A stretch of 64,000 bases of DNA from Marsupella aquatica (GCA_973895155.1 OZ316898.1:14476330-14540329), one strand, 5' to 3'. Positions 2,453 through 47,100 are shown, numbered from the stretch's first letter. Notes: generated from the sequence alone by a model not told the origin. Program-made: numbers and translations.

Positions 2453-14427
<11,975 letters not shown>

Positions 14428-15340: not shown

Positions 15341-17185
15341 TACAACATGTGCTTGGATTATTCTTACTCGATTCGAACCAATCCCAATTTAATTATCCAA
15401 AGGTTTGGAAGCAATCCACTACCAGGATTGTTGTCATCAATGCCCTCGTGTAAATACTCCCTAGACTATCGCAACAACTACACTCCTTCACTGTTGCGAG
15501 GAAAAGGTATTGTTGGATTGGCAAGGTAGTGTGTGCTAACAAACTAATGTACAATTTGTTGTTGCCTATCACAATGTGCACAAGGTCTGCTTCCGAGTTA
15601 TTTTCTGTCCAATTTGCAATAAATGAATTTTTTTTCCATATACAACTTTGGTTTTACTACTTGTTAATACCAATGTGAATTTGCATCATTGAATACAAAG
15701 TACAACATGCACTTGGGATTTGAAGTGATGAGCCCATCGTTGCTACAGGGGTTCTGGATGAAATTCTTACATTAGGTTCATATGCATCAAATAAATTTAA
15801 TGTCTCTAAGTAAGACGGCCGGCAGTGATTCCGATCGCAGAAAAGTTACCAAACTGATGTGGCACTTATATGATGGGGTATTGAGAACAAAAGAGTTAAA
15901 GTTTCTCTAGTTTCGGTGCTGTATCGAACGCAATGTTTGGTGGAGCTGCCTCCAAGTCTGACACCCCCGTCCCGCAGCAATCTTTGCTCGGATGGAAGCA
16001 TAACAGTTGTTCCAATATTTGCATCCATGCCACAACAATAGCCCCACTCACCCTGCCTCAATATGCATTGAGTTTTCTAATTTCTACAACCTATCATCAC
16101 ATGCTCTAGATCCGTAATCATAGAATAGCAGGATAATGTCTGCAATGCTGTCATGGGTTTCAGAACGATCATTGAACGGAAGAATTTGACCGATTCATCT
16201 CCCTCATCAACTCATCCTCTCCCGACTACAACTGAGCTTAGTTGTCGAAACCAAGATGGACGATGATACCACCGAATTGTAGAGTAGGTAACCACAAGTT
16301 TGAAAACGAATGCCATTCAAATCAATTGGACTGACGCAGGTAAGACACATCTCTGACAATTGCTTCACTTAGAACGCACAAATTCACCGAGATAATCGGA
16401 ATCACCGAGGAGCCGGGGAAAAGATTTTCAGATTGAACTATTTATCAAAGTTTTTCAAAATTTCAGTAGTTCAAATTCGATGAACAAACCTTCTACTATG
16501 AAAGTGTCCAGCATGACAAAAGCTTTTTCCAGATTGAGATCTTCTCGGAAAATGTTGTATCTCGTCTGTTCCGAAACTACAGAGTCGAGCTTGTCAACAT
16601 CTGTGTTTGGAGACATATCAACACTATCCCATATTTCAAAATTTCTAACCGCAAACATTCAACGCAATTGCCTAACAAAAAATGGTGTTCACACCACGGA
16701 GATCAAGCTTTTCCCGTGACATTTATCTTTTGAGCCGATCCTTGAACCGTTCGCATCGGTCTACACGGCAACCTCCGACCACATAATCCCGGCCATACAT
16801 CTGTGATCTATCATAATGGAGCTTTTGAGTACTCCCGAAGAAAACTGACAAGCCTTGCTCCAGCGAATCACACGTCCAGAGCCCTGCTCAGGCAAAAAGT
16901 TACAGCAGCAGTCGAAAGTCAATACGCTGTTGCTGGAATGTTTTAGAAAACGTCCAGAAGGTCTCAGAACCGAGGTTAGAACATAACTGATCAACGCAAT
17001 CCATCCTTTAAGCTATGCGACACCACTCCCAGAGAAATCTCCCTTGAATGTGTGACGCGTAAAATGTTGGCTCACCTATCAGGCGTAGTTGAAATTACGA
17101 AAACAAAAAACACAACGCGATGACTCTTTCCAGCTGTATACAAAAGAGAACAAGAATGTGCCGTCTCACCTGTAGTGATATCTCT

Positions 17186-20100
17186 TCATAGCAGTGAGGC
17201 AACCTTTGGTCTCAGGCTCTTAGCCAGTCCTTCGAATCTTCGACTAAGTTGGACTTCATCGAGGCTTACTTCAAAGGTACCATCCCCTGCCTTCGCCATA
17301 TCCTCCAGTGTCTTGCGGGAGGGATCGTTCCCGAACATAATGGTATGCAGTTGGAGCTTGGGATCCAAGGCCTTCATCGCACCGATATGAAACAGCGGGT
17401 CGCTACCTCCATTGTTACCACCATCACTAAGAAAAATAATAACAGGGCTCTTACGACTCAAGCGAGCGTCCTGCGCAGCGAGTGACAAGATCTGTTCGGC
17501 ATTCTGCAATCCACTCGAGTAGGTCGTGGATCCGTTGGCATGGTGCTGAAGTAGGTCGTCCACGAGACTCTCCTTCAACTCTTGAAGGCTGATAACAGTA
17601 TGAGCGGTATGATTAAATAAAATTACGGATGCAATGTCTTCCTGCACGGACGATAGACGAGTTCGTATAAACCGCAGTATAGCTTCGTACACGCAGCCCA
17701 ATCTGTTTCCATGATAGGCTGAAAACTTTGTCATAGTTGGTCTGATATCTCCCGACTCCATGGAACTTGACCGGTCGATTATGAAAATAACATTCACGGC
17801 GACATTTGTGGAGTGATCACAGCTGAAGTGATGGCCATCATCGGTGATGTATCCAGTTCCGAACTTCACGAGATCAGTTTTGGGGGACAGGCTGATGCCA
17901 CACAGTCTCTGTGCAGTAAGAGATCTTTTGGGCAACACCTCCACTTGCAGGATTGTGCTCGTCTGATTTGCACTGATGGTTGCAGAGAGCGAACTGCTTT
18001 TGCTCCTCAGCACTGCAAGGATCCTCGAACCTCATATATTCCCAGAATGCAGAGTGCGTCATCTCATCTTTGGGCATATCAAAGTCGGGTCCATATTTCC
18101 GCACCTCGTGCTGTGAACCGTCAAACATCTTTCTACAAGTGCCACCAGCCTTGTTGGCAGGGCAATGAATTAAATGAACGTGACCCCGACCTTGAGCTTT
18201 ACAGTGCATCTGGCACATCTCTGCCACGCCAGATTCTCCCCATGCGTACTTACGGTCAAGAATATCTATCTCCTCTGATTCAGCAACAAAATTCACATCC
18301 CTCATATTCCCATGCGTTGTATTGTGAAGTCCACCGTGTTCAATGGGACGATTACAGAAATACCCACAGCAGGGACATCTTGTTGCGCAAAAGTGGACGG
18401 CATCAGGATTAGAGCTGTGTGAATGGGGTCCGTCATGTCTGTCCTTGTAGGGAGGGATAACGATGCAACAGCCTTTCCTATTTCCGTTCTGCTCCGAAAC
18501 CAGCAAATAATCGAAGGTAGCTCGTTGTCCTGTGAAGGTCTGAGTTTTCTTACTCACCTCTGTCAGAACCTCGCAATTGCCTTTGTATTCACAGTGCTCA
18601 GAGCATGGATGCTCTACTCCGCACAAGTGTTGAGTAACTTCAGGATCTATCCCGTGGAAGTGATCTTCTGCCGCACAGGTTCGGTTGCAGTCTGTCATTG
18701 TGCACCGTCGGGGACAAAACTTTTCGTGGCAAGCATGGATCTCATGATCACCGACATCAATTGGACTGACACAAGGGTTCTTACAAGAAGGCAAGGAGCA
18801 AACTTGATTGCAAATATGCTGTCTAGAGTTGCACTGATGGTCTCCTGAATGTCCTGATTTCTTCGAGCAATTCCCGTTGCAATTGGACGATGTCGCTGCG
18901 TAGGTGCAGCACTTACCACAGGTGTGACTTTTCTCGTAACAATCATGTGGACCGTCATGACCAGCTTGATCATTGCAAGGCCCTGCGCCAAGGGCACTTT
19001 CCTCTTCCAGACAATATGTGCACAACGCCACGCACCTATGATCGCCCATACAAGTATGAACGGAAGGGTGTCCCTTTTCTTGAACGCATCTCAGGAAGCA
19101 CCTTTCACACTTGCAGCTGCAAAGGAGTAATTTCTGCTGAACCTCTGCGAGGAGCGCCACAGCTTCGAATTGTAACTTTTGAATATCTCCATCATTTGGA
19201 AAATCGGAAGTATTCGAAGCAATCCACTCTAAGACTCTACTCTTACGACGACGTACCAACGCGCTCACGAAGTTCTCGAAGAAAGAATGCCATTCCTCGT
19301 CCTTCTCCCCCTTTCGAGAAACAATGGTCTTGAACCTGGCCATCAAGTTGAAGAGAATATCCCCTGTAACTTTCTTTTCCCCAAAAGCAGAGAGCTCGAG
19401 CGCTGTATCACTTACAGGAAAATCGATGTCCTGAACAACAACCGGCTCATCTATTATGTCTACATAATCATCAAACTGAATCAGAGGTTTGCAAATTCCC
19501 TCGGTTACGAAGCAGCCGATGCTGATAGCACTTTTGAGATGTTTTTTGAGCAAGTTGATCCTGAGGGCCACTCGCTTTGAGTCGATTGGTGACCAGTCTT
19601 TGGTAGTGATTTGTGAAATAATCAATTTCAGGTCAAGTAGGAAACTCCTCCCGCTCAGGTAAGTTGCATTGAGTTCCTGTACTGTCCGAGCAATATCTAC
19701 AATGCTCTCATGAAATTCAATTCTGTTGAAGGACGGCATTGCTGAAATCTCAACCGCACCTCCATACATTCTGGTTAAAAAATTGTCCTGAGACTTGCTG
19801 CAGATCTGAGAAATTTTACTGAAGAACTCTTTCTTCAAATCGTCCACATCTGATATATCCACATCCTTAATAGCCATGTAAAATAGTCCTCGAAAGAGCT
19901 TGGCGTCGGTTTTCACCAACGACACGCCGTTCTGGAATCGCTCAAATATGGCTTCCGTTTCTTTATCCAAATGAAAATCCTGAACATTCCGCAACACAGC
20001 CAGATCTCAATTATGAGCCAAAACAAGGGGACTTTTTTTACTGCAACTAAAGCCAGGCAAGAGTACATATACAGTACTTGTAACAAGTGAATGTAAATTG

Positions 20101-23100
20101 CCCTTAAATCAAGTTTTAATGCAGCGTCCATGGCTCCACCTCTGGAGGAGGATCGACTCTCACACATGGAATTCACTGAGGAACAAAGGGGTGGATGCGC
20201 GGACGGCAAAGAAAGGCAGTACGGAATCGACACAGGAACATCAATAAAGGACACCGACCTTCTTATTGAAAATTGGCAAGTTCGAAACAGCCGCGTTCAA
20301 CAGGGAGAGAAGCATATCCTCCTGCTCGCTCCTTTCAAAGCTCCCCAGACCCTCGAAATCAAGGAGAACGTAAAGACAACCGTCCCCTTGACGCAACGTC
20401 ATCCACACACCATCGGTGCATCGTCCACCCGCAACATCCAGCAGGGACCCGCTCAAATGGTTGAGAAGATACGATTTTCCGCTGCTCTGCTTACCCATGG
20501 ATGAAATAACTTTGACGGGCCCCTTCCAACTGTCGTAAATGGCTTCGTACAGACCAAAGCGGATGACATTCGCCAAAGAGATGGCATCAGCATAGTCTAC
20601 ATTACCAGACAACTGAAGACCATCCACAAGTGGTTTCAAAGCATTTTGCTCTGCCCGAGCAATCTGAATCGGAACTAAACATATGAGCCTACTCATCCAA
20701 ATCCCCATCTGCACCTCCAGACCAGCAGGAGATCCCTCATCAACGTCCGACGGCAGATCTTCGGGAATCTGAAACTTGTCAGCATCGTAGACCGAAACAG
20801 CAAGCTGTAGAGCAGAGAAATCCTTACCCTTGTCTCTCTTAAGTCTACCAAGGGAAGTTTGAATATAGTCCCTGCACCTGTCACTCAGAGTTGCACTGAG
20901 ACCCTTTAACACCAACCCCAGATGCAATTCTCTCGAGTGTTCACTCAGAGGCGGACTGGTTGCGTACTTTTCGAAAATTTGGTATATGAAATCCAACACA
21001 GGACCCGACTGCATCGCTGCAGACTTCTTCTCGATATCAGCGACTTCTTCAGGCCGTGTCACCTGCTGCAGCTCACAAACTTCTGATGCCGATGAAATTT
21101 TAATAACCTGGGACCTGAGTCTGGATGGGGACAGGCTGTCAAAAACTACTAGATGCATCTGGGATGAAAACGATACAAGTCCGATTACCAGCTTCGACGA
21201 ATCCTTGACATTCATGTCCAAAGGTATCGAGCTGAAATGCTGTAACGAATCATTAATTTTGTACACATCTAATGTTAAATACTGCTCCTCTGAGGCCAGA
21301 GATGCAGCTATGGAATCTTCCGTGTTCGTCCGATCAGTCGGCGGATGCGACGAGTCTCCGGTGATCTCATTGTCAAGGCCCTCAGTTGCTTCAAGATCAC
21401 ACTCGACTTCATTATCAACTCGCTGTTGCCTTACACTGGCTCCATTGTCGTCCTCTGTGCACTTCACATTGCGCAGCCCCGTGCGCAGCAATAGCAAACA
21501 AGACCCTTGTGTCGTGACGCAAGTTTGGACGATCGGGGCGTGCCCTACATGAACATTACCCGATCTTACCATTCCTGGCTGGTTCACTTCGCACAACCTC
21601 ACTCGATGAAGATCATCCATGAAAACGATCTCACTTTTGCCGGTGACAAAATCCATCCAGATTAAACGAGCAATCGCACTGTACTCACCGAGATTAATGT
21701 CGACTCCTGTCCAGTCCATATGATGGAAAGCCTCGTCGAAGCGAAAAGTTTTAATTGTGGAAATCGAGCCATCATAAAAAGCTACGAAGCGAGATCTTTC
21801 ATCAAATGCAACCAAGTCAAAGCCTCTTCGCATTGTCTTGATAAGGTTTTTATCCGATAGCTTCACACCAAGTTTGGGGCATAGATAAATTAAAAGAGTC
21901 TTCGGCTCACCGTGCCCCTCGATGACGAATACAAGCAACTGGCCTGACTTCAGGAAGACTACTCTCAAAAGTACTTGGGTGCTAGGATCCAGGTCGATAA
22001 TTTCCTTACTTGCAGAGCAAGTCGGGCTGAATGAATATTCGTTATCGAGGACGAGCTGATCCAAATCCTCTTTCATTGGGGCCAATTCGCACCCATACCA
22101 CGTAATGCTCTCCTTCTCAAATGCTTCTCGGACGTAATTAATGGAAATCTTTTGACCATCTGCATTAGACTGGATTAATGATTGAAAAAACCGTCGAGGG
22201 GCCCATCTTCCAGATCTGTCAATAAGATTGCATGATTTAACAGTAAATGTTAACGAACCAGTACTGTCCTTTCTTGAAAGACGATCTTTCTGAGAGCGTA
22301 GGAAAGCTTTCTCCTCTTTCTGTAAGGTAGCTTGAAGCCTTTCGTAGCTTTCCGAACACTGCTTCCTGATTTTCCGATTCAGCAACAAGGTCGTAAACCT
22401 TCGAATGTGTGAGATCCTCGATTGAAAATCGCGCCGAAATGTTTTGTACACGTCGATACAGAGATTATTTAGCCCTGCAGAAATGGAAAACTGAGGTTCT
22501 GCCCTTGAATTTTGAAGCTCATCCCACTTTCCCCGTGCGAATTCGAGGACAGGTGTGGGTAGAAACCGTACCAGTACGCCTAGAGGATTCTCTGAGGCCA
22601 GGGTCTGGCGAGATAATTCCGCAGTCACATTGAATTCGGATTTACCAAGCTTTTCTGAAATAGCTGTCAACAATGCGGCTTGTCTCAAAATATTGGGGAA
22701 CGCCATCTGCTGACCCAGCCATTCTCTCAAATCTCCATTTCTGCGAAGTGGCTGTAGTTTCACCCTTTCCCAAGACCAGTCGTTCAAACTGAAACTCAAA
22801 TCTTCGTCAGAAAGAAGTGGACCATCGTCATCCATGGCTATACATCGATGGACTGTGCCAGTCTTCGGTGCTGCTGATGAACCATCTTTGCACCTCACGG
22901 TGACCCTGTCACCGTAAAATGCTGGCGCTATTTTGCTGGAGGCATTTCCAGAACTGGATCCCGCTGGAGCAATAGTCCAGAGCGTTACTTTGTCACGATT
23001 TGTAACATCCTTCCCAGTCGATGAGTTCAACACTCGGACTACCGAAGTGGGAAATATTATCCTCTGTTCGGAATTCGTACCGAAAAGGAGACCGTAGATC

Positions 23101-24806
23101 TCATCCTCCAGCCGATTTAGCTCATTCAAACCTTCTTGAGGGACCTTCTCAGCGCTCAACCCATTCCACTCAAGTTTCGACCGGTCTTGCGCTTCTCGGG
23201 ACAGACTCTGGCAATCCTTGTTTGTAGCACGTGAATTCTGAATCAAGTTCTCCTCCCATGATGGGTATTTGTACTTCAGGACACCATCGAGCAAAGATTC
23301 AAGGTAACGAGAAAGCTGCTCTTGCTCTTCTTCCACTAGCTGATCAACATTGTATAACATATTTTTCTCGTCCTCTTTTCGCTTCTCATTAGAAGCCAAA
23401 AGCCTGTCATAATCATCAGCCTGGTCGAGCTTCGCATAACGCATGAACAAAACAAAATCCGAGTCGGTGAGACTTTTGAGATCAAGACGATAGTCACAAT
23501 CTACGGTCCATTTGTTGATGAATGCAGGAAAGTCATCCACATTGATTTTGTCCGTAGCTTCCAAGGAGGCCAGCTTCCTAGGGCGCGTAGACGAAGCAAG
23601 CAACGCAATTCGGTTGCGTCCTTCGGACAGCTTGTAATCGTGGCCAAAAGTCAAACTAGAAGGCGCATCATTTTCGTTTGGGCCTTTAGAAGGAAGGTTA
23701 CTCCCAGGAAAAAGTGACAGACCTTGCAACCAAAATCCGGCAGTCATCTTAATACTGTCTTCTGATGCTTTGACCAGAGAAATCTGCAACCTTTGGGTAC
23801 GATGGCGTTTCGAAAACCTTGAAGAATTGTCAAACAGAGCATTTTTCAAGTTTCCGCCCTCCAAGCAGATGTACACTGTATCACAAAGGTCGAAGATATA
23901 TCTTATGAAATTGCACGACATGTCTTTACGGCTGGCCACGGGCAGCGAATGACCTTGATGCCAGTAGAATATGAAGACAGAGTTATCTCGCAACCATGCG
24001 TACAAACCAGGGGCAAGCTTGTCACTCTGAATCTGCGTCCAGACGTCCCCGTCCTCAGTGAGTTTCGTCTTCAGGAAAAATCCTCGCATGATATCTTTGC
24101 TTCCAAAACACCCGACCACTTTCATCGATTTGGAATTTAGACTCCCAAAATCAATTATGATCCTCTTGTCCTCGGACGTCCTCGCTGACCCTCCGGTGAT
24201 ATCGTTGCAAAGACGGAATATCTCATCTCGACACAGTATGACCTTTTCCACGAAAGATAGATCCTGGTTGTCGTTCTCAATCTGCATGAGCTTGAAGATC
24301 CTCTTGCGAACAGGCTGCAAGGATCGTCCAGTGAGTGCTGTGGTTGGTACGAGAGGAGAAACTTCAATTCCGGTGGCTCCTTTCTCCGATTGTCGGATGT
24401 TTTGCTCTGGAGTCACTTCTGCGATTGCATTGACAGCTCTCGGAGCCTGCGTTTGAGAAACACCAAGATTTTCTCTTCCATATCTGCCAAACACATCAAG
24501 GTCTGCACTCTCAAACGCATCGACATAGTCTCTTCTATTCTCTGACTCGACGTTCCGTGAGATATCAGGTCCTCCCGATCCATTGGTGGATCCGATTACG
24601 TCAATAGTCTCGAGGGCGACTTGAACACTTGGTGCGAGCTCTCCTCTGGAAGAAGACTCCGTATTTGCAGTGTTCTCTCCCAGACCTGAAAACAAAGACG
24701 GCCAGGGACTGTCGTTCCCACGACGAAATCCATCCCCGAATCCATCCCCGAATCCATCCCAAGAGTCATCTTCGGCACTGGAATGCGATGGCGATCCGCC
24801 GCCCAT
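17186..24806 (-). CDS. Giant (~2450 aa) GB1/RHD3-class (GBP/VLIG-like) GTPase with Cys/His-rich repeats and C-terminal VWA domain; one +1 frameshift near 17880
   Basis: Exon 1 is 24806-20259 (ATG of MGGGSP, 1516 codons, just after a tgtgcAG acceptor at 24819). A phase-0 intron spans 20258-19980 (AAG|GTCGGT ... ttcAG|GAT). Exon 2 is 19979-17186. GTPase motifs: G1 MGKQSSGKSYLLN (~20472-20498), G2 GGRCTDGVWM, G3 LLDFEGLG, G4-like MAIKDV. Repeated C-x3-C..H-x3-H-x-C modules occupy ~19120-17890. The VWA domain has MIDAS DRSSS..T..LSDG (~17800-17200). The frame is restored by removing one base in CCCCCAAAA (17886-17878). Confidence 0.85.
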
Positions 24807-33885: not shown

Positions 33886-35700
33886 GTGAGATCAAGAGAT
33901 TTTTCCAGAGTATGGATGCTTGATCAGCCTGAGTTCAGTGCAGCTCGCATTCGTCGGTACAAGGCCGCTTACTGGGACTACATTGCGTCGCGAATTGCTA
34001 AAGAGAGAAAAGGAAGACATACAGCCATGAGTACTGGACCAAATACCCGTAGTGCATCCGTTGAGAGGAGGGTTTTCCAAAGAGACTACCCTCGGACTTC
34101 TGCCAAGATGATGGAGGAGTGCAAGGAGATTTTTCAGGCCACGGGTCTCACCAATTTCATGCGGGTAGAGATCAGGATTCCCCAAGATAGGACTTGGAAT
34201 GTGGAGACGGGATTAGAGTTTTGTACGGAGGGGATATACTTTCATTGTACACAGAGGTTGATCCCCAACATGGAGCTGGCCAAGCTATTGTTCCTGGACA
34301 ACCAGGATTTCACTTTTCAGCCAGCGGAGCCACCAGAGACACTTACGTTGGAGAAGCTAGCTGAGGTTGTGAGAGATCCCACCTCCGTAACCACCATTCC
34401 CCTTTCATCATTCAAGGAACCAGCCTTCAAGGGGTTGGTGGCCAAGATACACCAACAGGTGCTTGGCCGGGGGCAATTTGAAGTGGTGAGTGGAGATCAA
34501 TTGGCTATTGCCAATGACATCAAAGCCCACCCAAGTCACACTTACGGATGGTGGTACTTTGGGCTGAAGAAAGCATTGGCCATAGATCCTAAAAGTGTGA
34601 AGTCCGGAGGGAGCGTTCATTTGATGGTGTCCTTCCTCTTGGCCAGGTCAGAAGGGCTCCTCCCCTCTCTGGGAACTGAAGAATCCGTGCCACCCTTCAC
34701 CATGGAAATACGGAGGATTGCAACTACCATCTTAGGGAGTCTCGCGACGGAACCACCGTCTGAACCTATAGCCAAAACCACTACAGAAGAGGAACCAGAT
34801 GAGGATAGCACGGTGGAGTGGATGGAGTCGCTTGTGGGGAATCCGAAGGAGCCCTTTGATTACGATGTGCCCGAGGTGTATTTGGCTGAATTACGTGATT
34901 TCCGCAATGGAGTGCATGAGGGGCTGAAGTTGTGCCAAACTTTGAGAGAGGCCCTCAACCAAGCCAATGCTAGGGTAGAAACCTTGTAGACGAGAAGCCA
35001 GGCCTTGAAAGAGGTGATAAAGCCTAAGGAGGTAGTGATCCAAGAGCAAGGTGGATCACTTACGGAGGCATAGGCTCAAATTTCTCAGTTGCACGGAGCT
35101 AAGGAAGCGTTGGAGGTGGGAGTCTTGAGGGAGGAATTGGCCAAGCTCAAGCAGAGCACTAGTGAGATAGAGAGGCTGAAGCGACAAATTGTGGAGTTAC
35201 GGGGCTAGGTTGAATGGGTGTCCCCGTCATTACGGGCAGAGATCTCACCTAGTCATGGAATAGCGGGGATGTTGGATATGCCACCTAGGACCGCAAACCC
35301 AGGAACCCCTTTGGCTATCGGTCAGGTCTTACCCTTGGAATTGCAGGGAGGGGAGGAGGCCACTCTATGGAAGGACACGATTAGCCATGGTTATGTTAGG
35401 GTCTGGCAAGCTTTGGCGGCATTGAGGAGACGGGGAGCCTCTGGCCAGGCCCGGGAAGGACTCCCCCGGCAAGGAGAATAGTAGGTGTTGCACCCACATC
35501 AGCGGAGGGCGCCGGCAGTTAGGATTCCCGAGGGTGGAGTCCCGGTTCCGTGAGTGAGTCGAGGGAAGACTAGTGAGGCGTACGGACGTTGGTCGTACGG
35601 ATTTTGAATTATGCAACACCTTGGATGAGAGGAATTGCGGGCTTGTTGGAAGGAGCTCGAGGAGCTGATTCCGGCAAGGTGTGGCACGCCCAGAATGGAG
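33886..35700 (+). pseudogene. TE-borne ORF (367 open codons, then a stop-interrupted coiled-coil extension); possibly plant-mobile-domain-like
   Basis: Open frame 33886-34989. The same frame continues through TAG stops into heptad-rich text (EELAKLKQSTSEIERLKRQIVELR). Resemblance to the plant mobile domain (ATGLTNF; YGWW..LKKAL..GGSVHL) is by eye only. Confidence 0.5.
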
Positions 35701-41106: not shown

Positions 41107-44100
41107 TGTTAGATATTGCTCTAGTCTTGTGACTCTTGTGCTAACCACAGTTAGGCTAACTCGGGTTAGGACCTAGCTAAGGTTAGTGGTAGTGCTGTTG
41201 TGCATATAGCCAAGGCTGATGCCAGACCCTGGTGGAACTTAGGCTCATTGTTACGGAGCTAGTTGAGAGATAGGGAGAGCTTGTGCTGTGGATGCTTGGT
41301 ATGGCCGGTCGGCCTAGAGTGCAGTAAAGCTCTTGTGTGTTCCCGTGGACGTAGCCTCATGTGGAGGTGAACCACGTATCTCTCTGTGTCGACTATTGTG
41401 CGTTGGATGGTTCATGGGCTTGCCGTTGCGAATGTCGTCTATGCTCAACAAGTGGTATCAGAGCATGCTTGGGAGGTGACGAGGTTTTTTCGTGACAGGT
41501 TTTTCCAGTGTTCATTGTCGATGGTACATTCAGAGTTTCGTCGCATGAAACTTGATTGTGTGTGGCTGAGTGGATAGGTTAGTGAGAGGGCATTCTAACG
41601 GTGGTTAGAGCTCGCTGATCGGTATGATCCGTGGTGCGGAGGAATTAAAGTTTGCGTCGTTCAGGGTTTATTCGTGTTCGACGGTATTTTGGGGGAGAAA
41701 CCAGAGATCGTTTCTTCAACGGTGTGAGCTGTGCGGTGTGCGGGGCGTCGCATGTGATAGTTCAAGTTGAAGGTTGGAGCGTGCTGGTCATTTTGGTATC
41801 TAGTTTGCTGACGTTTGCAAAACGAGTGCATCGTGACGAGTGAAGGAGGCGTTCTGGTTTTTTGACAAGCTATGGTGCTTGTTTTTCCCTGAACTGGATT
41901 ACTCGTCGTGACGCTTGACTCGGAGGAAGAAACACGAAGTGCTGAGGCTCAACGGAGAGATTGTGGCGAGACGGTTGTTTTGAGTCCGGGATTGGCACTT
42001 GACACGGAGTGAAGGCGACGCAACTGAAGTTCTTTCTCTGGTGGAGCTTCAGACGTGCCGGTGCAATTCGGAAACATTTTCATGTCGGCGGTCATCACTT
42101 TTCTCATTGGAAACCAAAGCGGAGGCGGCTGAGGTTTGTAACACGGCCTTTGTGTCATTTTGGGCACATTTTTAAGGTTAGTTTAGGGCATTTTTTGCCC
42201 CAATATGGCCCCAATACCCGACAAACCAGGTTTGCCATACGCCCCGGCGCGCACACCGGCCTCCCACATCCCTTTAAGTGCAAAAATGTGCTTTTTTGGG
42301 CCCAAATACGGCCAAAAACGCCCATATACGGCCCAAAAACGCGAAAATACGCGCGTTTTGACCCCTTTAAACCCGTTTTTTGCTGTTTATACGCGATTCT
42401 GGCCGCGAATACGCGCGCCTTTGCCAGGGGCTTTAAAGACCCCTTTAGAGTGTGTTTTTCTGAATTTTTTTCTCTCCTCCTCATTGGTTGTGCCTCATCC
42501 CGGGCCCTATGACCCTCCGTTTTAACCGCTCTGACAGGGGGAACGGCCCCCTGTGAGCCCTGTTGGACTGTGCGGGAATATTCCCCAAAAATAGAGAGCT
42601 GGTTTTTGGCCGTCACACAAAGATTTCGTCCGCCGCACGGTAACTTTTTTGGTTCTTTTTTGGTGAGGACGTTGCCACTGGAGTTAGCAACGCGGCGCAC
42701 CCATCACATCGCGATTCCGACGACAGGTTGTACTTGGTATTTCGGTTATTCTCCGAGGTGGTCAAAACGGGGGAGTTTCCCAAGGTTTTACCCACCCTGA
42801 CCAAAATTTGAATAACTTTTCCGTCGAATTTCGATTTTGATTTCGGATTTCAGTATTGGACTCCTAGCTTTGTGGGCTACGCGGCGGTGTTGAGTTTTGA
42901 GTTTTATGAGAAGTTTTGAAAAAAGACGTTTTTTCGTGATTGTTTCATATGAGTGACTCGGAGGATACTAGAAGAATTGGCATCGGTGGAGCTTCAGGAT
43001 CGTGACAGTCAGACGGAGAGTCTTAGGAGGAGCTGCTACCGTTTGAGGAGGAACTTATAACACCGGTACGATCACCGGTGCGGCGTGCAATGGAGGAAGC
43101 TGTGTTACTACCAGAGCTGTCGGTAGTAGGGAAGAAGAGGGAGATGGCTAGATTTGGAGGAGTGAAGTTTGAGGTGGAGAAGTACGATGGTCGTACTGAT
43201 TACTTGCTCTGGGAGAAGCAAGTGAAAGGTGTTCTACGGGTAATGGGCTTAGCTCATCTGCTTTCATCGCGAGAGCAGTATGATGGAGAGGAGGAGATTT
43301 TAGTGAGGCAATGGAGATAGGAGCAGGTGATTGCTGTCAATGCAGTGATGCTATATCTCAAGCCGCACATCATCAAGCAGTTGGATGATTATACGGATTG
43401 CGCGTCACTGTTCAAGGCTCTAAGAGAGAAGTACTACCGGGAAGATGCGTCAGACCGGCTGTACAAGAAGTCTCTCTTGATGAGCCTCAGGCTCAAGGAA
43501 GGGAGCAAGATGCAGGATCACCTGGATGAGTTTGACAGTCTAGCGGTTGATCTGTCAAACCTGGGAAAAGGAGTTGAAGATGAGGATAAGGCCTTGCTTT
43601 TGCTAAGCTCCTTACCGCCGTTATATCAGGGCTTGAAACAGGTGCTCTTGTACAGAGATCTGAAGTCCATTTCGTATAATGAGGTGGTAAGTTCTTTACT
43701 GTCTGATGATGCTCAGAAGAAGCTGGGTCAATCACAGATAGCATCTTCTTCTGGCACTGCGCTCAATGTGAACAGGGGCAGAGCAACGCAGCGCACGAAT
43801 GGGCAGAACAAGTTTAGATCAACATCACGGGGGAGATCTAAATCCAGAGGAAAAACGCAAGAGAGGAAGCCTCTTGCATGTTGGAATTGTGGCAAGCCAG
43901 GCCACATGAAAAGGGATTGTCGAGTAAAGGTCCCTACTGCCTCTGATAACGCAGCATCGAGCTCGCATGAGGTAGATTTACTCGATGATGATGACATATT
44001 GTGATGTCAAGGTTATGCTCTCAACGTAGTGTCAAATCCAGGTAGTGATGACTAGATTCTAGATAGTGCATGTACTTTTCATATTTGCTCTAGAAGAGAT

Positions 44101-47100
44101 TATTTCAGTTCTTACACGGTTTCCAACGGGTCAGTGTTGATGGGAAATGGAATCCCATGTCAAGTTGTTGGACTTGGATCTGTACGATTTCAGATGTTTG
44201 ATGGTGTTGTGAGAACATTGAGGAATGTGAGACATATTCCCAGCATGATGAAAAATCTCATTTCACTTGGAGTTTTAGAGACAAATGGCCATCAGTGGAG
44301 TTCTGCTAATGGTGTCCTTCAGGTTTCAACTGGTACTAAAGTTGTATTGAAGGAAAACAGATATTGCAATCTATACGTTATGGAGGGCAGTGTAGTCTAT
44401 GATGAAGCCAATGTAACCTTATCTCATGAGGAGACGGCCCGGCTATGGCACTTCCGTTTGGGCCACATGAGTGAAAAAGGTTTGGTTATTCTTCAGAAGA
44501 AAGGATTACTTTCTAATTTGCAATCTTGTAAGTTGGAATTTTGTGAGCACTGTGTGCTAGGAAAGCAGCACAGGAAACCCTTCGGAGTTGGAACTCACAC
44601 CAGCAAGGAGGTACTTGAGTATGTACATAGTGATGTGTGGGGTCCCGCCCCTACTCCCTCACATTCTGGACGGTTATACTATGTCACGTTCATTGACGAT
44701 TACTCAAGGTATGTGTGGATATACTTTCTACACAATAAATCTGATGTTTTTGCCACTTTTAAGGAGTGGAAAGCCCAAGTTGAAAATCAGACTGGTAATA
44801 AGGTGAGATATCTTCGATCGGATAACGGCGGTGAATACAGTTCCGGTGAATTTGGAATGTATTGTAAGGAGCAGGGGATTACCCTCCATCTCACAACAAG
44901 CTATACTCCTCAGCAGAATGGTGTTTCTGAGAGACTCAACCGAACACTATTGGACCGCTCGAGGAGTATGTTGAGTCAATCATGCTTACCACATGAGTTT
45001 TGGGCTGAAGCTGTCAACACTGCAGCTTATTTGGTAAATTTTTCTCCATCTAGTTCTATTGGATTCAAGATGCCATTTGAAATGAGGTATGGGCGTCCAG
45101 CAGATTACTCACATCTGAGGATTTTTGGATGTGATGCTTATGTGCTTACACCTTCCCAGCTTCGATCCAAGCTGGACTCCAAGTCGAAGAAGTGCATTTT
45201 CCTTGGTTATCAGAAAGGTGTGAAGGGTTATAGGTTATGGGATCCAGTAACCTATAAGCTAATTGTCAGTAGAGATGTATCCTTTAATGAATCCAGATCA
45301 TCAAAGGAGGGAGAGAGTTCTCAAGACTCCCATACTGACAAGGGGAAATCTCCCATCCCGGACCGGGTTGAGGGGGAGATTAGTCATGATGCAGTTCATG
45401 ACAGGAGAGATGGAGAAGCTCCGGGCTTGGAGCTGGTTCCTGTGATGGAACAAGAGGAGCAAATTGTTGCTGGGGTACCTCAAATTCAACCAACAGCAAC
45501 AACAGATCAGCCTGAGTCATCTACTAGAAGAACTTCTAGTCGTTCTACTAGAGCTCCTACCAGGTATGGTCAATGGGCAGACTCATCTAAGCTAGATGAT
45601 ATTGACATTGCACCTGATGAAGATGATATGGCTTTGATCTTGGAAGAAGGAGAGCCTTCTTCGTATAGTGAGGCTTGTGCTTCAGAGCAGAAGCATGAGT
45701 GGAATGCAGCAATGCAGAGGGAGTTGCAATCTTTGAGTGACAACAAGACATGGGAGCTGGTGGTACTTCCAAGAGGTCAACAAGTGGTGGACAGCAAGTA
45801 GATTTACAAGTTGAAGGACAATCCTTCAGAGGGTGGAGATAAGATCTACAAGGCAAGGCTTGTTGCCAAGGGGTTCACTCAAGAGAAAGGAGTCGATTAC
45901 AATGAGGTCTTTTCACCGGTGGCTAAGTATTCCACAATTTGGATCTTGTGTCAGCTTGTTGTGTTTTTTAATCTGGTGATGGATCAGATGGATGTTGTTA
46001 CTGCTTTTCTCTATGGCAACTTGGAAGAGATGATCTTCACGAGACAGCCACTAGGCTTTATGAAGAAGGGCCAAGAGAACTTAGTTTGCAGATTGCTCAA
46101 ATCCTTGTATGGATTGAAGCAATCTCCCAGACAGTGGAACAAGCGGTTTGATGATTTCATGCTTGCTCAAGGTTTTATAAGGATGGTGTATGATCCTTGT
46201 GTGTATACGAAATCAGTCAAGAATGATGTATTTGGTTTCATCATTCTGGTGATCTATGTGGATGACATGCTAATTGTGGCTAAAGATCAATCTGAGGTTG
46301 ACAGTCTCAAGGCAAAATTGAGCGCTGAATTCAGGATGAAGGATCTTGGTAAGGCCAAGAGGATCTTAGGGATGGAGATTTTTAGGAGGTCTGAGACTGG
46401 ACAGTTGTGCTTGAGTCAAGGCCAGTATGCGAGGAAAGTACTTGCACGATTCAACATGGAGAACTGTAAGCCAGTGAGTATTCCTTTAGCTTCACATTTC
46501 AAGTTATCATCAGCTTTCTCTCCTACGGATGCTGTGGAGAAAGGTCTGATGGCTAAGATTCCTTATGAGAAGGCAGTAGGCAGTCTGATGTATTTGATGA
46601 CTTGTACTAGGCCTGACTTGGCCCTAGCGATGGGCAAGGTTAGCAGATTCATGTCAAATCCAGGGAAGGTACATTGGGAAGCTGTGAAATGGATTCTCAG
46701 GTATGTGAAGGGAACACAGGACTATGGATTACTATTTGATAACAGATCAAATAGAACGTTAGTTGGCTATGTAGATTCTGACTATGGAGGTTGTCTGGAT
46801 ACAAGGAGATCTACAACTAGGTTTGTATACACTCTTGGAGGAGGATGTATCAGTTGGAAATCTACCTTGCAGAAGTGCATATCTCAGTCTACTACAGAAG
46901 CATAGTATGTTGCAGCAGCAGAAGCTGCAAAGGAAGCAATTTGGTTGGATAAGTTGATCGCGGAGATGGGTTTAGAGCATGGAAAAATGACTCTAAACTG
47001 TGATAGTCAGAGTGCTCTTCACTTGGCTGCTAACCAGGTGATGGATAGCAGGGTGAAGCACATTGATATTAGGTACCATTTTATCAGGCAAGCAGTGTCT

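What the first reader, a model, noticed from the sequence alone, without database searches (positions are those of the whole stretch)
17186..24806. Giant GBP/VLIG-like GTPase fused to a Cys/His zinc-finger-like array and a VWA domain: candidate plant cell-autonomous immunity or non-self sensor
Seen: a ~2450-aa protein with ~1400 aa of unrecognised N-terminal sequence (helical part plus a beta-rich, propeller-like stretch). It is followed by GB1/RHD3-class motifs (GKQSSGKS / GRCTDG / DFEG / IKD), a helical stalk-like region, ~400 aa of C/H repeats and a MIDAS-type VWA. Established: GB1/RHD3 includes GBPs, atlastin/RHD3 and the very large inducible GTPases (GVIN/URGCP), whose G2 is GRCT-like; GBPs and GVIN act in pathogen-directed immunity in animals, and GBP-like proteins act in plant immunity. 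This protein lacks the C-terminal TM hairpin of RHD3. Inference: the architecture is not that of angiosperm RHD3 or GBPL. From memory it resembles uncharacterised fungal/protist VWA+GTPase proteins, so it could be an undescribed plant defence module.
Basis: partly seen in the sequence, partly recalled or inferred. Interest (0 to 1): 0.85.

Follow-up and report, generated by a model that had tools for sequence, protein, structure and literature searches.

The report
Giant GTPase–zinc array–VWA gene, frameshifted
A liverwort gene encodes a 2,450-residue relative of the animal immune GTPases (GBP/GVIN) fused to a beta-propeller, a large zinc-binding array and a VWA adhesion domain; it belongs to an old, unstudied family found across eukaryotes but not seen in flowering plants, and this copy has a fresh one-base insertion that cuts off the VWA domain.

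Summary
They are not one open frame. A 279-nt GT-AG intron (20258-19980) splits the G domain. A one-base insertion (C5 instead of C4, 17882-17886) puts the VWA domain out of frame. Two runs from the source organism show the insertion. A close relative (organism B) and the Calypogeia fissa orthologue lack it.

The protein belongs to a conserved, uncharacterised eukaryotic family: N-domain, helices, beta-propeller, GBP/atlastin/VLIG-class G domain, helical stalk, about 410 residues of Cys/His array with about 65 near-invariant ligands, then a MIDAS VWA. Members occur in bryophytes, lycophytes, ferns, gymnosperms (tandem expansion in Cryptomeria), algae, fungi, oomycetes, dinoflagellates, amoebae, sponges and acoels. 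No angiosperm appeared in two searches. Relatives carry extra RING/B-box, ankyrin, SAM, C2, kinase or ADP-ribosyltransferase domains.

The core is under strong purifying selection (dN/dS 0.09-0.18), the N-terminal half less so (0.26-0.53).

It is not RHD3, GBPL or GVIN by HMM thresholds or architecture. An immune role is plausible but untested: no RNA data and no paper on the family were found. The scan had not noted this family on other DNA.

The parts
24312..24806 (-). Start codon (ATG at 24806; MGGGS... shared with the Calypogeia orthologue) and about 165 residues of low-complexity tail that is only partly conserved
   Evidence: Family-wide homology to more distant relatives starts at residue ~170, while the Calypogeia orthologue aligns from residue 12. 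dN/dS 0.42.
23430..24302 (-). Conserved alpha/beta N-domain (exon-1 residues 169-459); fold not assigned
   Evidence: AF2 pLDDT is mostly 85-93. It is homologous across the family, including non-plants. The Atlas gave only leads (fungal unnamed clusters 0.95, Smg8_Smg9 0.91, GBP/RHD3 0.87-0.88). hhalign against the protein's own G domain was negative. A PDB profile search gave nothing.
22278..23426 (-). Helical/coiled segments, a small beta domain and a 67-residue helix (exon-1 residues 461-843); the least constrained part
   Evidence: DSSP on the model. dN/dS 0.53.
21063..22250 (-). WD40-like beta-propeller (exon-1 residues 853-1248) with a disordered acidic loop at 21294-21461
   Evidence: Model pLDDT 85-97, about 25 strands. 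Foldseek PDB WD40/propeller hits at E 3.5e-6 to 2e-4, probability 1.0. Prp19 WD40 by profile at E 0.03.
20259..20993 (-). Pre-G alpha/beta elements and the N-terminal half of the large G domain: G1 GKQSSGKS 20495-20472, G2 GRCTDG 20426-20409, G3 DFEG 20360-20349
   Evidence: Pfam URGCP_GTPase 9.3e-8, GBP 1e-4, RHD3 2.3e-4. PDB GBP1/2/5 at E 1e-4, or 6e-8 by profile. The motifs are nearly invariant in 37-88 homologues.
19980..20258 (-). Intron, 279 nt, GT...AG, phase 0, inside the G domain
   Evidence: Donor AAG|GTCGGT and acceptor TTCAG|GAT. Read-through meets a stop. The Calypogeia protein and locus are colinear across it, with an intron at the same place. No RNA evidence.
19605..19979 (-). 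C-terminal half of the G domain with the G4-equivalent IKD (19874-19860)
19131..19586 (-). Helical bundle (stalk) after the G domain
   Evidence: Helices 132-154, 205-217, 227-256 and 264-283, pLDDT >90. The best Foldseek hit of the model is Sey1p at E 0.16, followed by GBP1 and ATL1.
17889..19121 (-). Cys/His array (exon-2 residues 287-697), about 65 near-invariant Cys/His, an HxC-x4-5-HxC-x3-C unit repeated about six times; presumed multi-zinc module
   Evidence: Model pLDDT about 90. No Pfam hit at E 10. No PDB sequence or fold match. dN/dS 0.10.
17882..17886 (-). Frameshift site: C5 on the coding strand, where organism B and Calypogeia have C4; the resulting in-frame stop is TGA at 17876-17874
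   Evidence: read laying shows one letter left out at 17882 in an organism-B contig (depth 47.6). Both organism-A runs match the window.
17189..17884 (-). VWA domain with a complete MIDAS (DRSSS 17776-17762, then T and D), in the +1 frame; Pfam VWA spans 17794-17273; stop codon at 17188-17186
   Evidence: Pfam VWA 6e-12 (46.6 bits against cut-off 23.8) and VWA_2 3e-12. 88% identical to Calypogeia. dN/dS 0.09.

Best explanation
This is a nuclear gene of a leafy-liverwort genome (nearest public relative Calypogeia fissa). It encodes a giant soluble dynamin-superfamily GTPase of the GBP/atlastin/VLIG class.

It belongs to an ancient, eukaryote-wide and so far uncharacterised family with a fixed body plan:
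- disordered tail;
- alpha/beta N-domain;
- helical region;
- WD40-like propeller;
- large G domain with all nucleotide-binding motifs;
- Sey1p/GBP-like helical stalk;
- about 410 residues of multi-zinc Cys/His array;
- MIDAS VWA.

Shown: the architecture, the homology, the conservation and the selection pattern.

Inferred from the class: GTP binding and hydrolysis drive G-domain dimerisation and stalk movement, so the protein self-assembles. The propeller, the zinc array (NFX1-like spacing, possibly nucleic-acid binding) and the MIDAS-VWA (metal-dependent binding of an acidic residue of a partner) then act as the client- or target-binding surfaces of that assembly.

In this individual a very recent one-base insertion truncates the product just before the VWA. 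A close relative keeps the frame.
For: Gene structure and colinearity with the 2,387-aa Calypogeia protein and its locus.

G motifs and HMM or PDB matches to URGCP, GBP, RHD3 and Sey1.

Confident models: exon 2 at pLDDT 88.7 and pTM 0.82, with the stalk nearest Sey1p; the N-part at pLDDT 78.9 with a propeller.

Family size and conservation:
- 983 cluster representatives match exon 2 at E<=1e-3, most over all 701 residues.
- About 65 Cys/His positions, the G motifs and the MIDAS are nearly invariant.

Land-plant members form one clade (SH-aLRT 100) that roughly tracks the species tree.

dN/dS against Calypogeia is 0.09 (VWA), 0.10 (Cys/His array), 0.14-0.18 (G domain and stalk), 0.26 (propeller) and 0.35-0.53 (N-terminal parts). 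Organism A against organism B shows 13 synonymous to 6 non-synonymous differences in one run, and 17 to 10 in another.

The frameshift is supported by a long contig and by Hi-C-like short-read contigs of organism A. It is absent in organism B and in Calypogeia.
Against: - No expression or splicing data exist for this locus. All runs that hold it are DNA contigs, with no joints.
- No biochemical datum exists for any family member, so GTPase activity, zinc binding and oligomerisation are all inferred.
- The one complex prediction (G-domain homodimer of the orthologue) gave no verdict.
- The G domain is below the curated thresholds of URGCP_GTPase and RHD3_GTPase, and only marginal for GBP.
- The N-domain and the Cys/His array have no assigned fold.
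- The Calypogeia assembly has its own one-base insertion elsewhere in the gene. The gene may therefore be decaying in this lineage, or that insertion may be an assembly error.
Confidence: 0.65

Rival explanations
1. The family is a cell-autonomous immunity or conflict module. On this reading it is a GBP/GVIN-like GTPase that coats or marks a pathogen, foreign nucleic acid or damaged compartment. The propeller or zinc array would act as sensor, and the VWA or fused RING, ART and kinase domains as output.
For: - The nearest characterised G domains are the immune GBPs and VLIG/GVIN. GVIN1 forms an antibacterial coat (10.1101/2025.03.24.645074).
- Relatives carry TRIM-like B-box+RING, SAM, ankyrin, C2, kinase and ADP-ribosyltransferase add-ons.
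- Cryptomeria has at least 14 proteins, most on one chromosome with near-consecutive locus tags. Ceratopteris has tandem copies.
- Distribution is patchy, with no angiosperm hit.
- There is a disabling polymorphism here.
- The N-terminal half evolves faster than the core.
Against: - No expression, infection or genetic data exist.
- The core is very slowly evolving, at 30-40% identity between plants and animals or protists over 700 residues, with dN/dS about 0.1. No region shows dN/dS above 1.
- The gene is low-copy in bryophytes.
- Domain shuffling and gene loss also occur in non-immune families.
Confidence: 0.3
2. The family has a dispensable housekeeping role, for example remodelling or tethering of membranes or organelles as atlastin/RHD3/Sey1p do, or assembly or surveillance of an RNA-protein complex through the zinc array. 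It would have no dedicated role in defence.
For: - The best structural match of the G C-half plus stalk is Sey1p.
- Purifying selection is strong and the body plan is invariant across eukaryotes.
- It is one or two copies in most bryophytes and lycophytes.
- Its VWA relatives in the PDB include the intracellular Rpn10 and TFIIH p44.
Against: - No TM hairpin or lipidation motif.
- No angiosperm member appeared in two searches, which argues against an essential function.
- Lineage-specific tandem expansions and effector-like add-ons are unusual for housekeeping genes.
Confidence: 0.3
3. In this genome the locus is simply a nascent pseudogene, and its product has no function.
For: - The frameshift removes a domain that is under the strongest constraint in the family.
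- The Calypogeia assembly also shows an independent one-base insertion, which the public model bridges with an intron that drops 77 residues.
- Other GTPase gene families in this genome were noted by the scan as decaying (not tested here).
Against: - There is only one lesion. The 2,217-codon upstream frame and the 232-codon VWA frame are otherwise intact.
- dN/dS of 0.09-0.5 shows that function was retained until very recently.
- A truncated protein without the VWA could still act.
- The lesion is absent in organism B.
Confidence: 0.3
4. The frameshift is an assembly or consensus error, and the gene is intact in the source organism.
For: It lies in a homopolymer (C5 followed by A4). The best holder, run X1, may be the very data from which the window was assembled.
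Against: A second run of organism A (X2) supports it. Its short-read contigs end at GATC sites, which is Hi-C-like. One contig spans 17463-18665 at depth 46 with no difference from the window. A 5-base run is not error-prone for short reads.
Confidence: 0.08

Closest known systems
VLIG/GVIN1/URGCP very large inducible GTPases (animals)
   Same: URGCP_GTPase is the best-scoring Pfam G-domain model in the window and in three of the four orthologues re-scanned. One relative is named 'VLIG-type G domain-containing protein' by UniProt. The switch-I motif is GRCT-like (from memory). The protein is giant, soluble, and has a long N-terminal extension.
   Different: Scores (24-35 bits) are below the model's 55-bit cut-off, and only about 75 of 396 profile positions align. 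By its authors' AlphaFold description, GVIN1 has two large G domains and neither a zinc array nor a VWA. This family has one recognisable G domain, a propeller, a Cys/His array and a VWA.
Guanylate-binding proteins (GBP1-5; plant GBPL)
   Same: They are the only PDB sequence relatives of the G domain (E 1e-4 for the single sequence, 6e-8 by profile). G4 is of the RD/KD type. A helical domain follows the G domain. The GBP Pfam model is marginally passed (22.0 bits against 21.1).
   Different: There is no GBP_C hit and no CaaX box. About 1,430 residues precede the G domain, and the zinc array and VWA follow the stalk. The protein is not in the GBPL architecture.
RHD3 / Sey1p / atlastin
   Different: RHD3_GTPase scores 21-25 bits against a cut-off of 42.4. 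There is no C-terminal transmembrane hairpin.
NFX1-type zinc-finger arrays (NFX1, ZNFX1)
   Same: HxC...HxC...C units are repeated in tandem. One stretch fits the published NFX1-type pattern, which I recalled from memory and tested as a regular expression. An NTPase followed by such an array also occurs in ZNFX1 (from memory).
   Different: Pfam finds no family at all in the exon-2 piece, so no zf-NF-X1, and no zinc-finger family in three full-length relatives, even at E 10. There is no PDB sequence or fold match. The array also holds a long beta-hairpin and non-repeat Cys/His clusters.
Intracellular and extracellular MIDAS VWA domains (Rpn10, TFIIH p44, ITIH, CLCA1)
   Same: Pfam VWA is passed and the MIDAS DxSxS...T...D is complete. 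Profile hits fall on these VWA structures.
   Different: None of them is fused to a GTPase. The partner of this VWA is unknown.

Membership tests
GB1/RHD3-type (GBP/atlastin/VLIG class) large GTPases | G1 GxxxxGK[ST], a switch-I threonine, G3 DxxG, and an RD/KD-type G4 instead of NKxD | tested here: met
   GKQSSGKS, GRCTDG, DFEG and IKD are at the expected spacing. They are nearly invariant in 37-88 homologues.
GB1/RHD3-type (GBP/atlastin/VLIG class) large GTPases | Helical bundle directly after the G domain | tested here: inconclusive
VLIG/URGCP | Passes the Pfam URGCP_GTPase (PF25683) gathering score | tested here: not met
   31.6 bits against 55 for the window. Relatives score 24-35 bits.
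RHD3/atlastin | Passes the Pfam RHD3_GTPase gathering score | tested here: not met
   21.1 bits against 42.4. The orthologue scores 24.4.
RHD3/atlastin | C-terminal transmembrane hairpin | tested here: not met
   No 19-residue window exceeds Kyte-Doolittle 1.6 except one propeller strand.
GBP / plant GBPL | GBP N-terminal domain plus the GBP_C helical domain | tested here: not met
   GBP (PF02263) scores 22.0 bits against 21.1, which is marginal. GBP_C is not hit in the window or in orthologues.
VWA (MIDAS type) | Pfam VWA threshold and the MIDAS DxSxS...T...D | tested here: met
   VWA scores 46.6 bits against 23.8, and VWA_2 47.5 against 27. DRSSS, the Thr of GSTTY and the Asp of LSDGG are present. 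The domain is out of frame in this genome.
NFX1-type zinc finger | Match to Pfam zf-NF-X1, or the pattern C-x(1-6)-H-x-C-x3-C(H/C)-x(3-4)-(H/C)-x(1-10)-C in tandem | tested here: inconclusive
   No Pfam hit at E 10. The strict pattern (from memory) is found once. A looser HxC...HxC...C unit occurs about six times.
WD40-like beta-propeller | Toroidal arrangement of 4-stranded blades | tested here: met
   About 25 strands at pLDDT 85-97. There are 286 PDB matches at E<=0.001, and those listed are WD40/propeller proteins. No Pfam WD40 hit.
Zinc-binding module | Bound zinc with tetrahedral Cys/His sites | not testable with these tools
   Only inferred, from about 65 near-invariant Cys/His positions.

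The most novel reading that the evidence does not exclude
The GTPase-zinc array-VWA family is an ancient eukaryotic cell-autonomous defence machine, a sister of GBP and VLIG that predates the split of plants, fungi and animals. Its zinc array or propeller would sense foreign nucleic acid or a pathogen surface. GTP-driven assembly, the MIDAS-VWA and (in some lineages) fused RING, ART or kinase domains would execute the response. Non-flowering plants would then keep an immune arm that angiosperms lost.
Probability: 0.22. Interest if true: 0.85.

Novelty: new variant of a known kind. Interest (0 to 1): 0.6.

Why it matters
Large GBP/VLIG-class GTPases are central to animal cell-autonomous immunity, and GBP-like proteins act in Arabidopsis defence. 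Here the same class of G domain sits in a quite different, strictly conserved 2,200-2,600-residue architecture: propeller, about 16 presumed zinc sites, and a MIDAS VWA.

That architecture is spread over most eukaryotic supergroups. It is present in every non-flowering land-plant lineage sampled and has no published description that I could find.

Defining its function would:
- add a new branch to the dynamin superfamily;
- show what a GTPase-coupled multi-zinc array does;
- test whether bryophytes, ferns and conifers keep a defence or assembly system that flowering plants lack.

The natural pair of alleles, truncated before the VWA in organism A and intact in organism B, gives a ready-made comparison.

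Tried and rejected
- All searches used the three pieces by reference.
- N-domain (exon-1 residues 165-460): no fold or family assigned.
  - phmmer and profile searches of the PDB gave nothing.
  - hhalign against the family's own G domain gave probability 0.15%.
  - The Atlas gave only leads: unnamed fungal clusters, Smg8_Smg9, GBP/RHD3.
  - Foldseek searches of PDB and BFVD with the 1,191-residue model were filled by propeller hits.
  - The model's second half is a beta-meander, so a degenerate G fold is doubtful.
- Cys/His array: no Pfam hit at E 10, no PDB sequence hit at E 10, no fold match by Foldseek or VIA. The Atlas returned only short fungal fragments at or below 0.87.
- NCBIfam: nothing beyond weak VWA hits.
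- G-domain homodimer of the orthologue with GDP (complex prediction): no verdict. This is not evidence either way.
Both were re-sent smaller.
- Literature: eight searches for the family (VLIG or very large inducible GTPase with von Willebrand/VWA terms, VLIG-type and URGCP-like names, NFX1 with vWA and dynamin, GBP in non-flowering plants, GVIN with atlastin phylogeny, conflict systems, six gene identifiers) found no description. PMC8195603 mentions GBP fusions only to TRADD-N.
- A mini-intron that could bypass the frameshift was considered and rejected. Any GT...AG removal would delete conserved residues that are colinear with Calypogeia.
- An N-myristoylation signal at MGGGS was considered and rejected. 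Position 6 is Pro or Gln, which does not fit the PROSITE pattern as I remember it.
- A G-domain tree with GBP, RHD3 and GVIN outgroups could not be built, because no reference sequences were obtainable by id.


Full report
**1. What is in the sequence**

On the minus strand three long ORF pieces follow one another: 24830/24806-20241, 19997-17874 and 18013-17186.

The first piece ends in FNKK followed by GTCGGT. The second resumes after TTCAG with DFHLDKE. This is a 279-nt GT-AG, phase-0 intron (20258-19980) that lies inside the G domain.

The second and third pieces overlap in different frames. The 2,387-aa protein P0001 of the liverwort Calypogeia fissa is colinear with all three pieces. Identity is 55% over the first 816 residues, 73% up to the intron, 86% in piece 2 and 88% in piece 3. 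P0001 reads ...WHQPVPKTDL... straight across the frame change.

The window has GTCCCCCAAAAC where Calypogeia has GTCCCCAAAAC. One extra C therefore makes the encoded frame stop at TGA 17876-17874 and leaves the VWA domain untranslated.

I searched and folded the three pieces separately by reference. The joined, frame-corrected protein was not built.

**2. Is the frameshift real?**

Reads were laid on 17100-22600, which is 5,501 letters and so under the 6,000 limit.

- Both runs of organism A agree with the window. One is a 28-kb contig that may be the assembly's own data. The other is short-read contigs ending at GATC sites, hence Hi-C-like, with one contig spanning 17463-18665 at depth 46 and no difference.
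- A contig of organism B, from another study, spans 17718-19996 at depth 47.6 and has one letter left out at 17882. That restores the frame.
- B's only other indels in the stretch lie in the 3' flank (17115) and in the intron (20245).

The insertion is therefore most likely a true, very recent lesion of the source individual or lineage (about 0.9), not an assembly error (about 0.08).

No contig skips the intron and no holder is on record as RNA. Splicing and expression rest on homology and splice consensus only.

**3. Domains**

G domain:
- Pfam finds URGCP_GTPase (9.3e-8, 31.6 bits, cut-off 55), GBP (22.0 bits against 21.1) and RHD3_GTPase (21.1 bits against 42.4) at the P-loop.
- The intact orthologues score the same way.
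- PDB sequence relatives are GBP1/2/5 and Sey1p only.
- G1 GKQSSGKS, G2 GRCTDG, G3 DFEG and the G4-equivalent IKD are present and nearly invariant in the family.

Exon-2 model (pLDDT 88.7, pTM 0.82):
- From residue 287 to 697 it shows a confidently modelled, loop-rich Cys/His array.
- The array holds 45 Cys and 33 His in 421 residues and about 65 near-invariant Cys/His positions, enough for about 16 zinc sites (inference).
- An HxC-x4-5-HxC-x3-C unit is repeated about six times.
- The array resembles NFX1-type fingers in spacing only. Pfam gives no hit at E 10, and no PDB sequence or fold match was found.

Exon-3 piece: a VWA (Pfam 6e-12) with a complete MIDAS.

Exon-1 model, residues 160-1350 (pLDDT 78.9):
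- an alpha/beta N-domain (169-459);
- coiled helices, a small beta domain and a 67-residue helix;
- a WD40-like propeller (853-1248; Foldseek E 3.5e-6, probability 1.0) with a disordered acidic loop.

There is no TM-like segment. The N-domain's fold could not be assigned.

**4. The family**

Exon 2 matches 983 cluster representatives at E<=1e-3 among 1.84 billion (291 at E<=1e-30). Most of the proteins in hand cover all 701 residues.

Homology to exon 1 starts at residue ~170 in plants and non-plants alike. The whole body plan is therefore ancestral.

Named members come from:
- liverworts, a moss, Selaginella and ferns;
- Ginkgo, Taxus and Cryptomeria;
- Klebsormidium, Mesostigma and Botryococcus;
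- Galdieria and dinoflagellates;
- oomycetes and amoebozoans;
- sponges and an acoel;
- many Basidiomycota.

No angiosperm appeared, although a Ginkgo core query should have found one at about 50% identity. I infer loss in flowering plants.

In a maximum-likelihood tree of the core, land-plant proteins form one clade (SH-aLRT 100). The window is sister to Calypogeia, and gymnosperms split into two old paralogue lines, one expanded in Cryptomeria. Inheritance is therefore vertical, not a recent transfer.

Cryptomeria has at least 14 proteins, most on one 863-Mb chromosome with near-consecutive locus tags. Ceratopteris has neighbouring copies.

Other lineages add two B-boxes plus a RING, ankyrin repeats, SAM plus C2, SAM plus RING, a C-terminal kinase or a C-terminal ADP-ribosyltransferase.

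**5. Selection**

Nei-Gojobori dN/dS between the window and the Calypogeia locus:

| Region | dN/dS |
|---|---|
| VWA | 0.09 |
| Cys/His array | 0.10 |
| G C-half plus stalk | 0.14 |
| G N-half | 0.18 |
| Propeller | 0.26 |
| N-domain | 0.35 |
| Tail | 0.42 |
| Helical / small-beta region | 0.53 |

Differences between organisms A and B are mostly synonymous: 13 synonymous to 6 non-synonymous in one run, and 17 to 10 in another.

The gene, including the VWA, was therefore functional until very recently. No region shows an excess of replacements.

The Calypogeia assembly carries its own extra G near L001:12737. The public model hides it with an intron that drops 77 conserved residues. I could not tell whether that is a real lesion or an assembly error.

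**6. Mechanism**

Shown: the architecture, the motif integrity and the conservation.

Inferred from the dynamin/GBP/atlastin class: nucleotide-dependent G-domain dimerisation and stalk movement produce self-assembly. The propeller, the zinc array and the MIDAS-VWA then provide binding surfaces. The one complex prediction gave no verdict.

Whether the assembly serves defence or a dispensable housekeeping task is open.
- For defence: the closest G-domain relatives are immune GTPases (GVIN1 coats Burkholderia; 10.1101/2025.03.24.645074). Add-on domains are shuffled, there are tandem expansions and patchy loss, and a disabling allele occurs here.
- Against: the core is very slowly evolving, the gene is low-copy in bryophytes, and there is no expression or genetic evidence.

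I put defence at about 0.3.

**7. Comparison and novelty**

The protein is not a member of RHD3/atlastin (HMM threshold and TM hairpin not met). It is not GBP/GBPL (no GBP_C, different architecture). It is not VLIG/URGCP (HMM threshold not met; GVIN1 has two G domains and no zinc array or VWA).

It works like them in having a GBP-class G domain followed by a helical stalk. It is best filed as a distinct, undescribed branch of that class.

Databases hold its members only as 'VWFA domain-containing' or 'VLIG-type G domain-containing' proteins. Eight literature searches found no study of the family. The scan's own notes list no other copy of this family.

**8. Verdict**

I rate it a new variant of a known kind, interest 0.6.

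Noticed in passing
window 4356-14106 (+): A multi-exon PRP8 spliceosome gene (PROCN, RRM_4, U6-snRNA_bdg, PRP8_domainIV, JAB/MPN and PROCT hits in successive ORFs). It is convergent with the GTPase gene.
   Followed up: partly
window 43327-46905 (+): A Ty1/copia retrotransposon: gag, zinc knuckle, integrase and RVT_2 in three consecutive ORFs. The surrounding 32-48 kb shows strong positive GC skew.
   Followed up: partly
L001:12670-12790 (Calypogeia fissa, GCA_965154635.1): The Calypogeia orthologue has an extra G relative to the window, which shifts the frame. The public gene model bridges it with an intron that removes 77 residues. Those residues are coding-like and 67% identical to the window's. 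This is either a second, independent lesion or an assembly error.
   Followed up: partly
L001:20693-25362 (-): Downstream of the Calypogeia orthologue lies an aspartic protease gene with saposin-like domains, not PRP8. Synteny on that side is therefore not shared with the window. About 400 bases just past the 3' end are still alignable.
   Followed up: no
window 33886-34989 (+): A 367-aa ORF without any Pfam hit, in the GC-skewed region upstream of the copia element.
   Followed up: no
window 17100-22600, runs X6-X9: Four air-metagenome runs hold 5-12% of the sampled words of this stretch. This may reflect airborne liverwort material or a relative's conserved parts.
   Followed up: no
P0032, P0037, P0040, P0047 (relatives): In several protist or metagenome relatives a RING finger is inserted between the N-domain and the propeller. 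This is roughly where the window's protein has a small, Cys-free beta domain. B-boxes or a SAM domain sit at the N-terminus of those relatives.
   Followed up: partly
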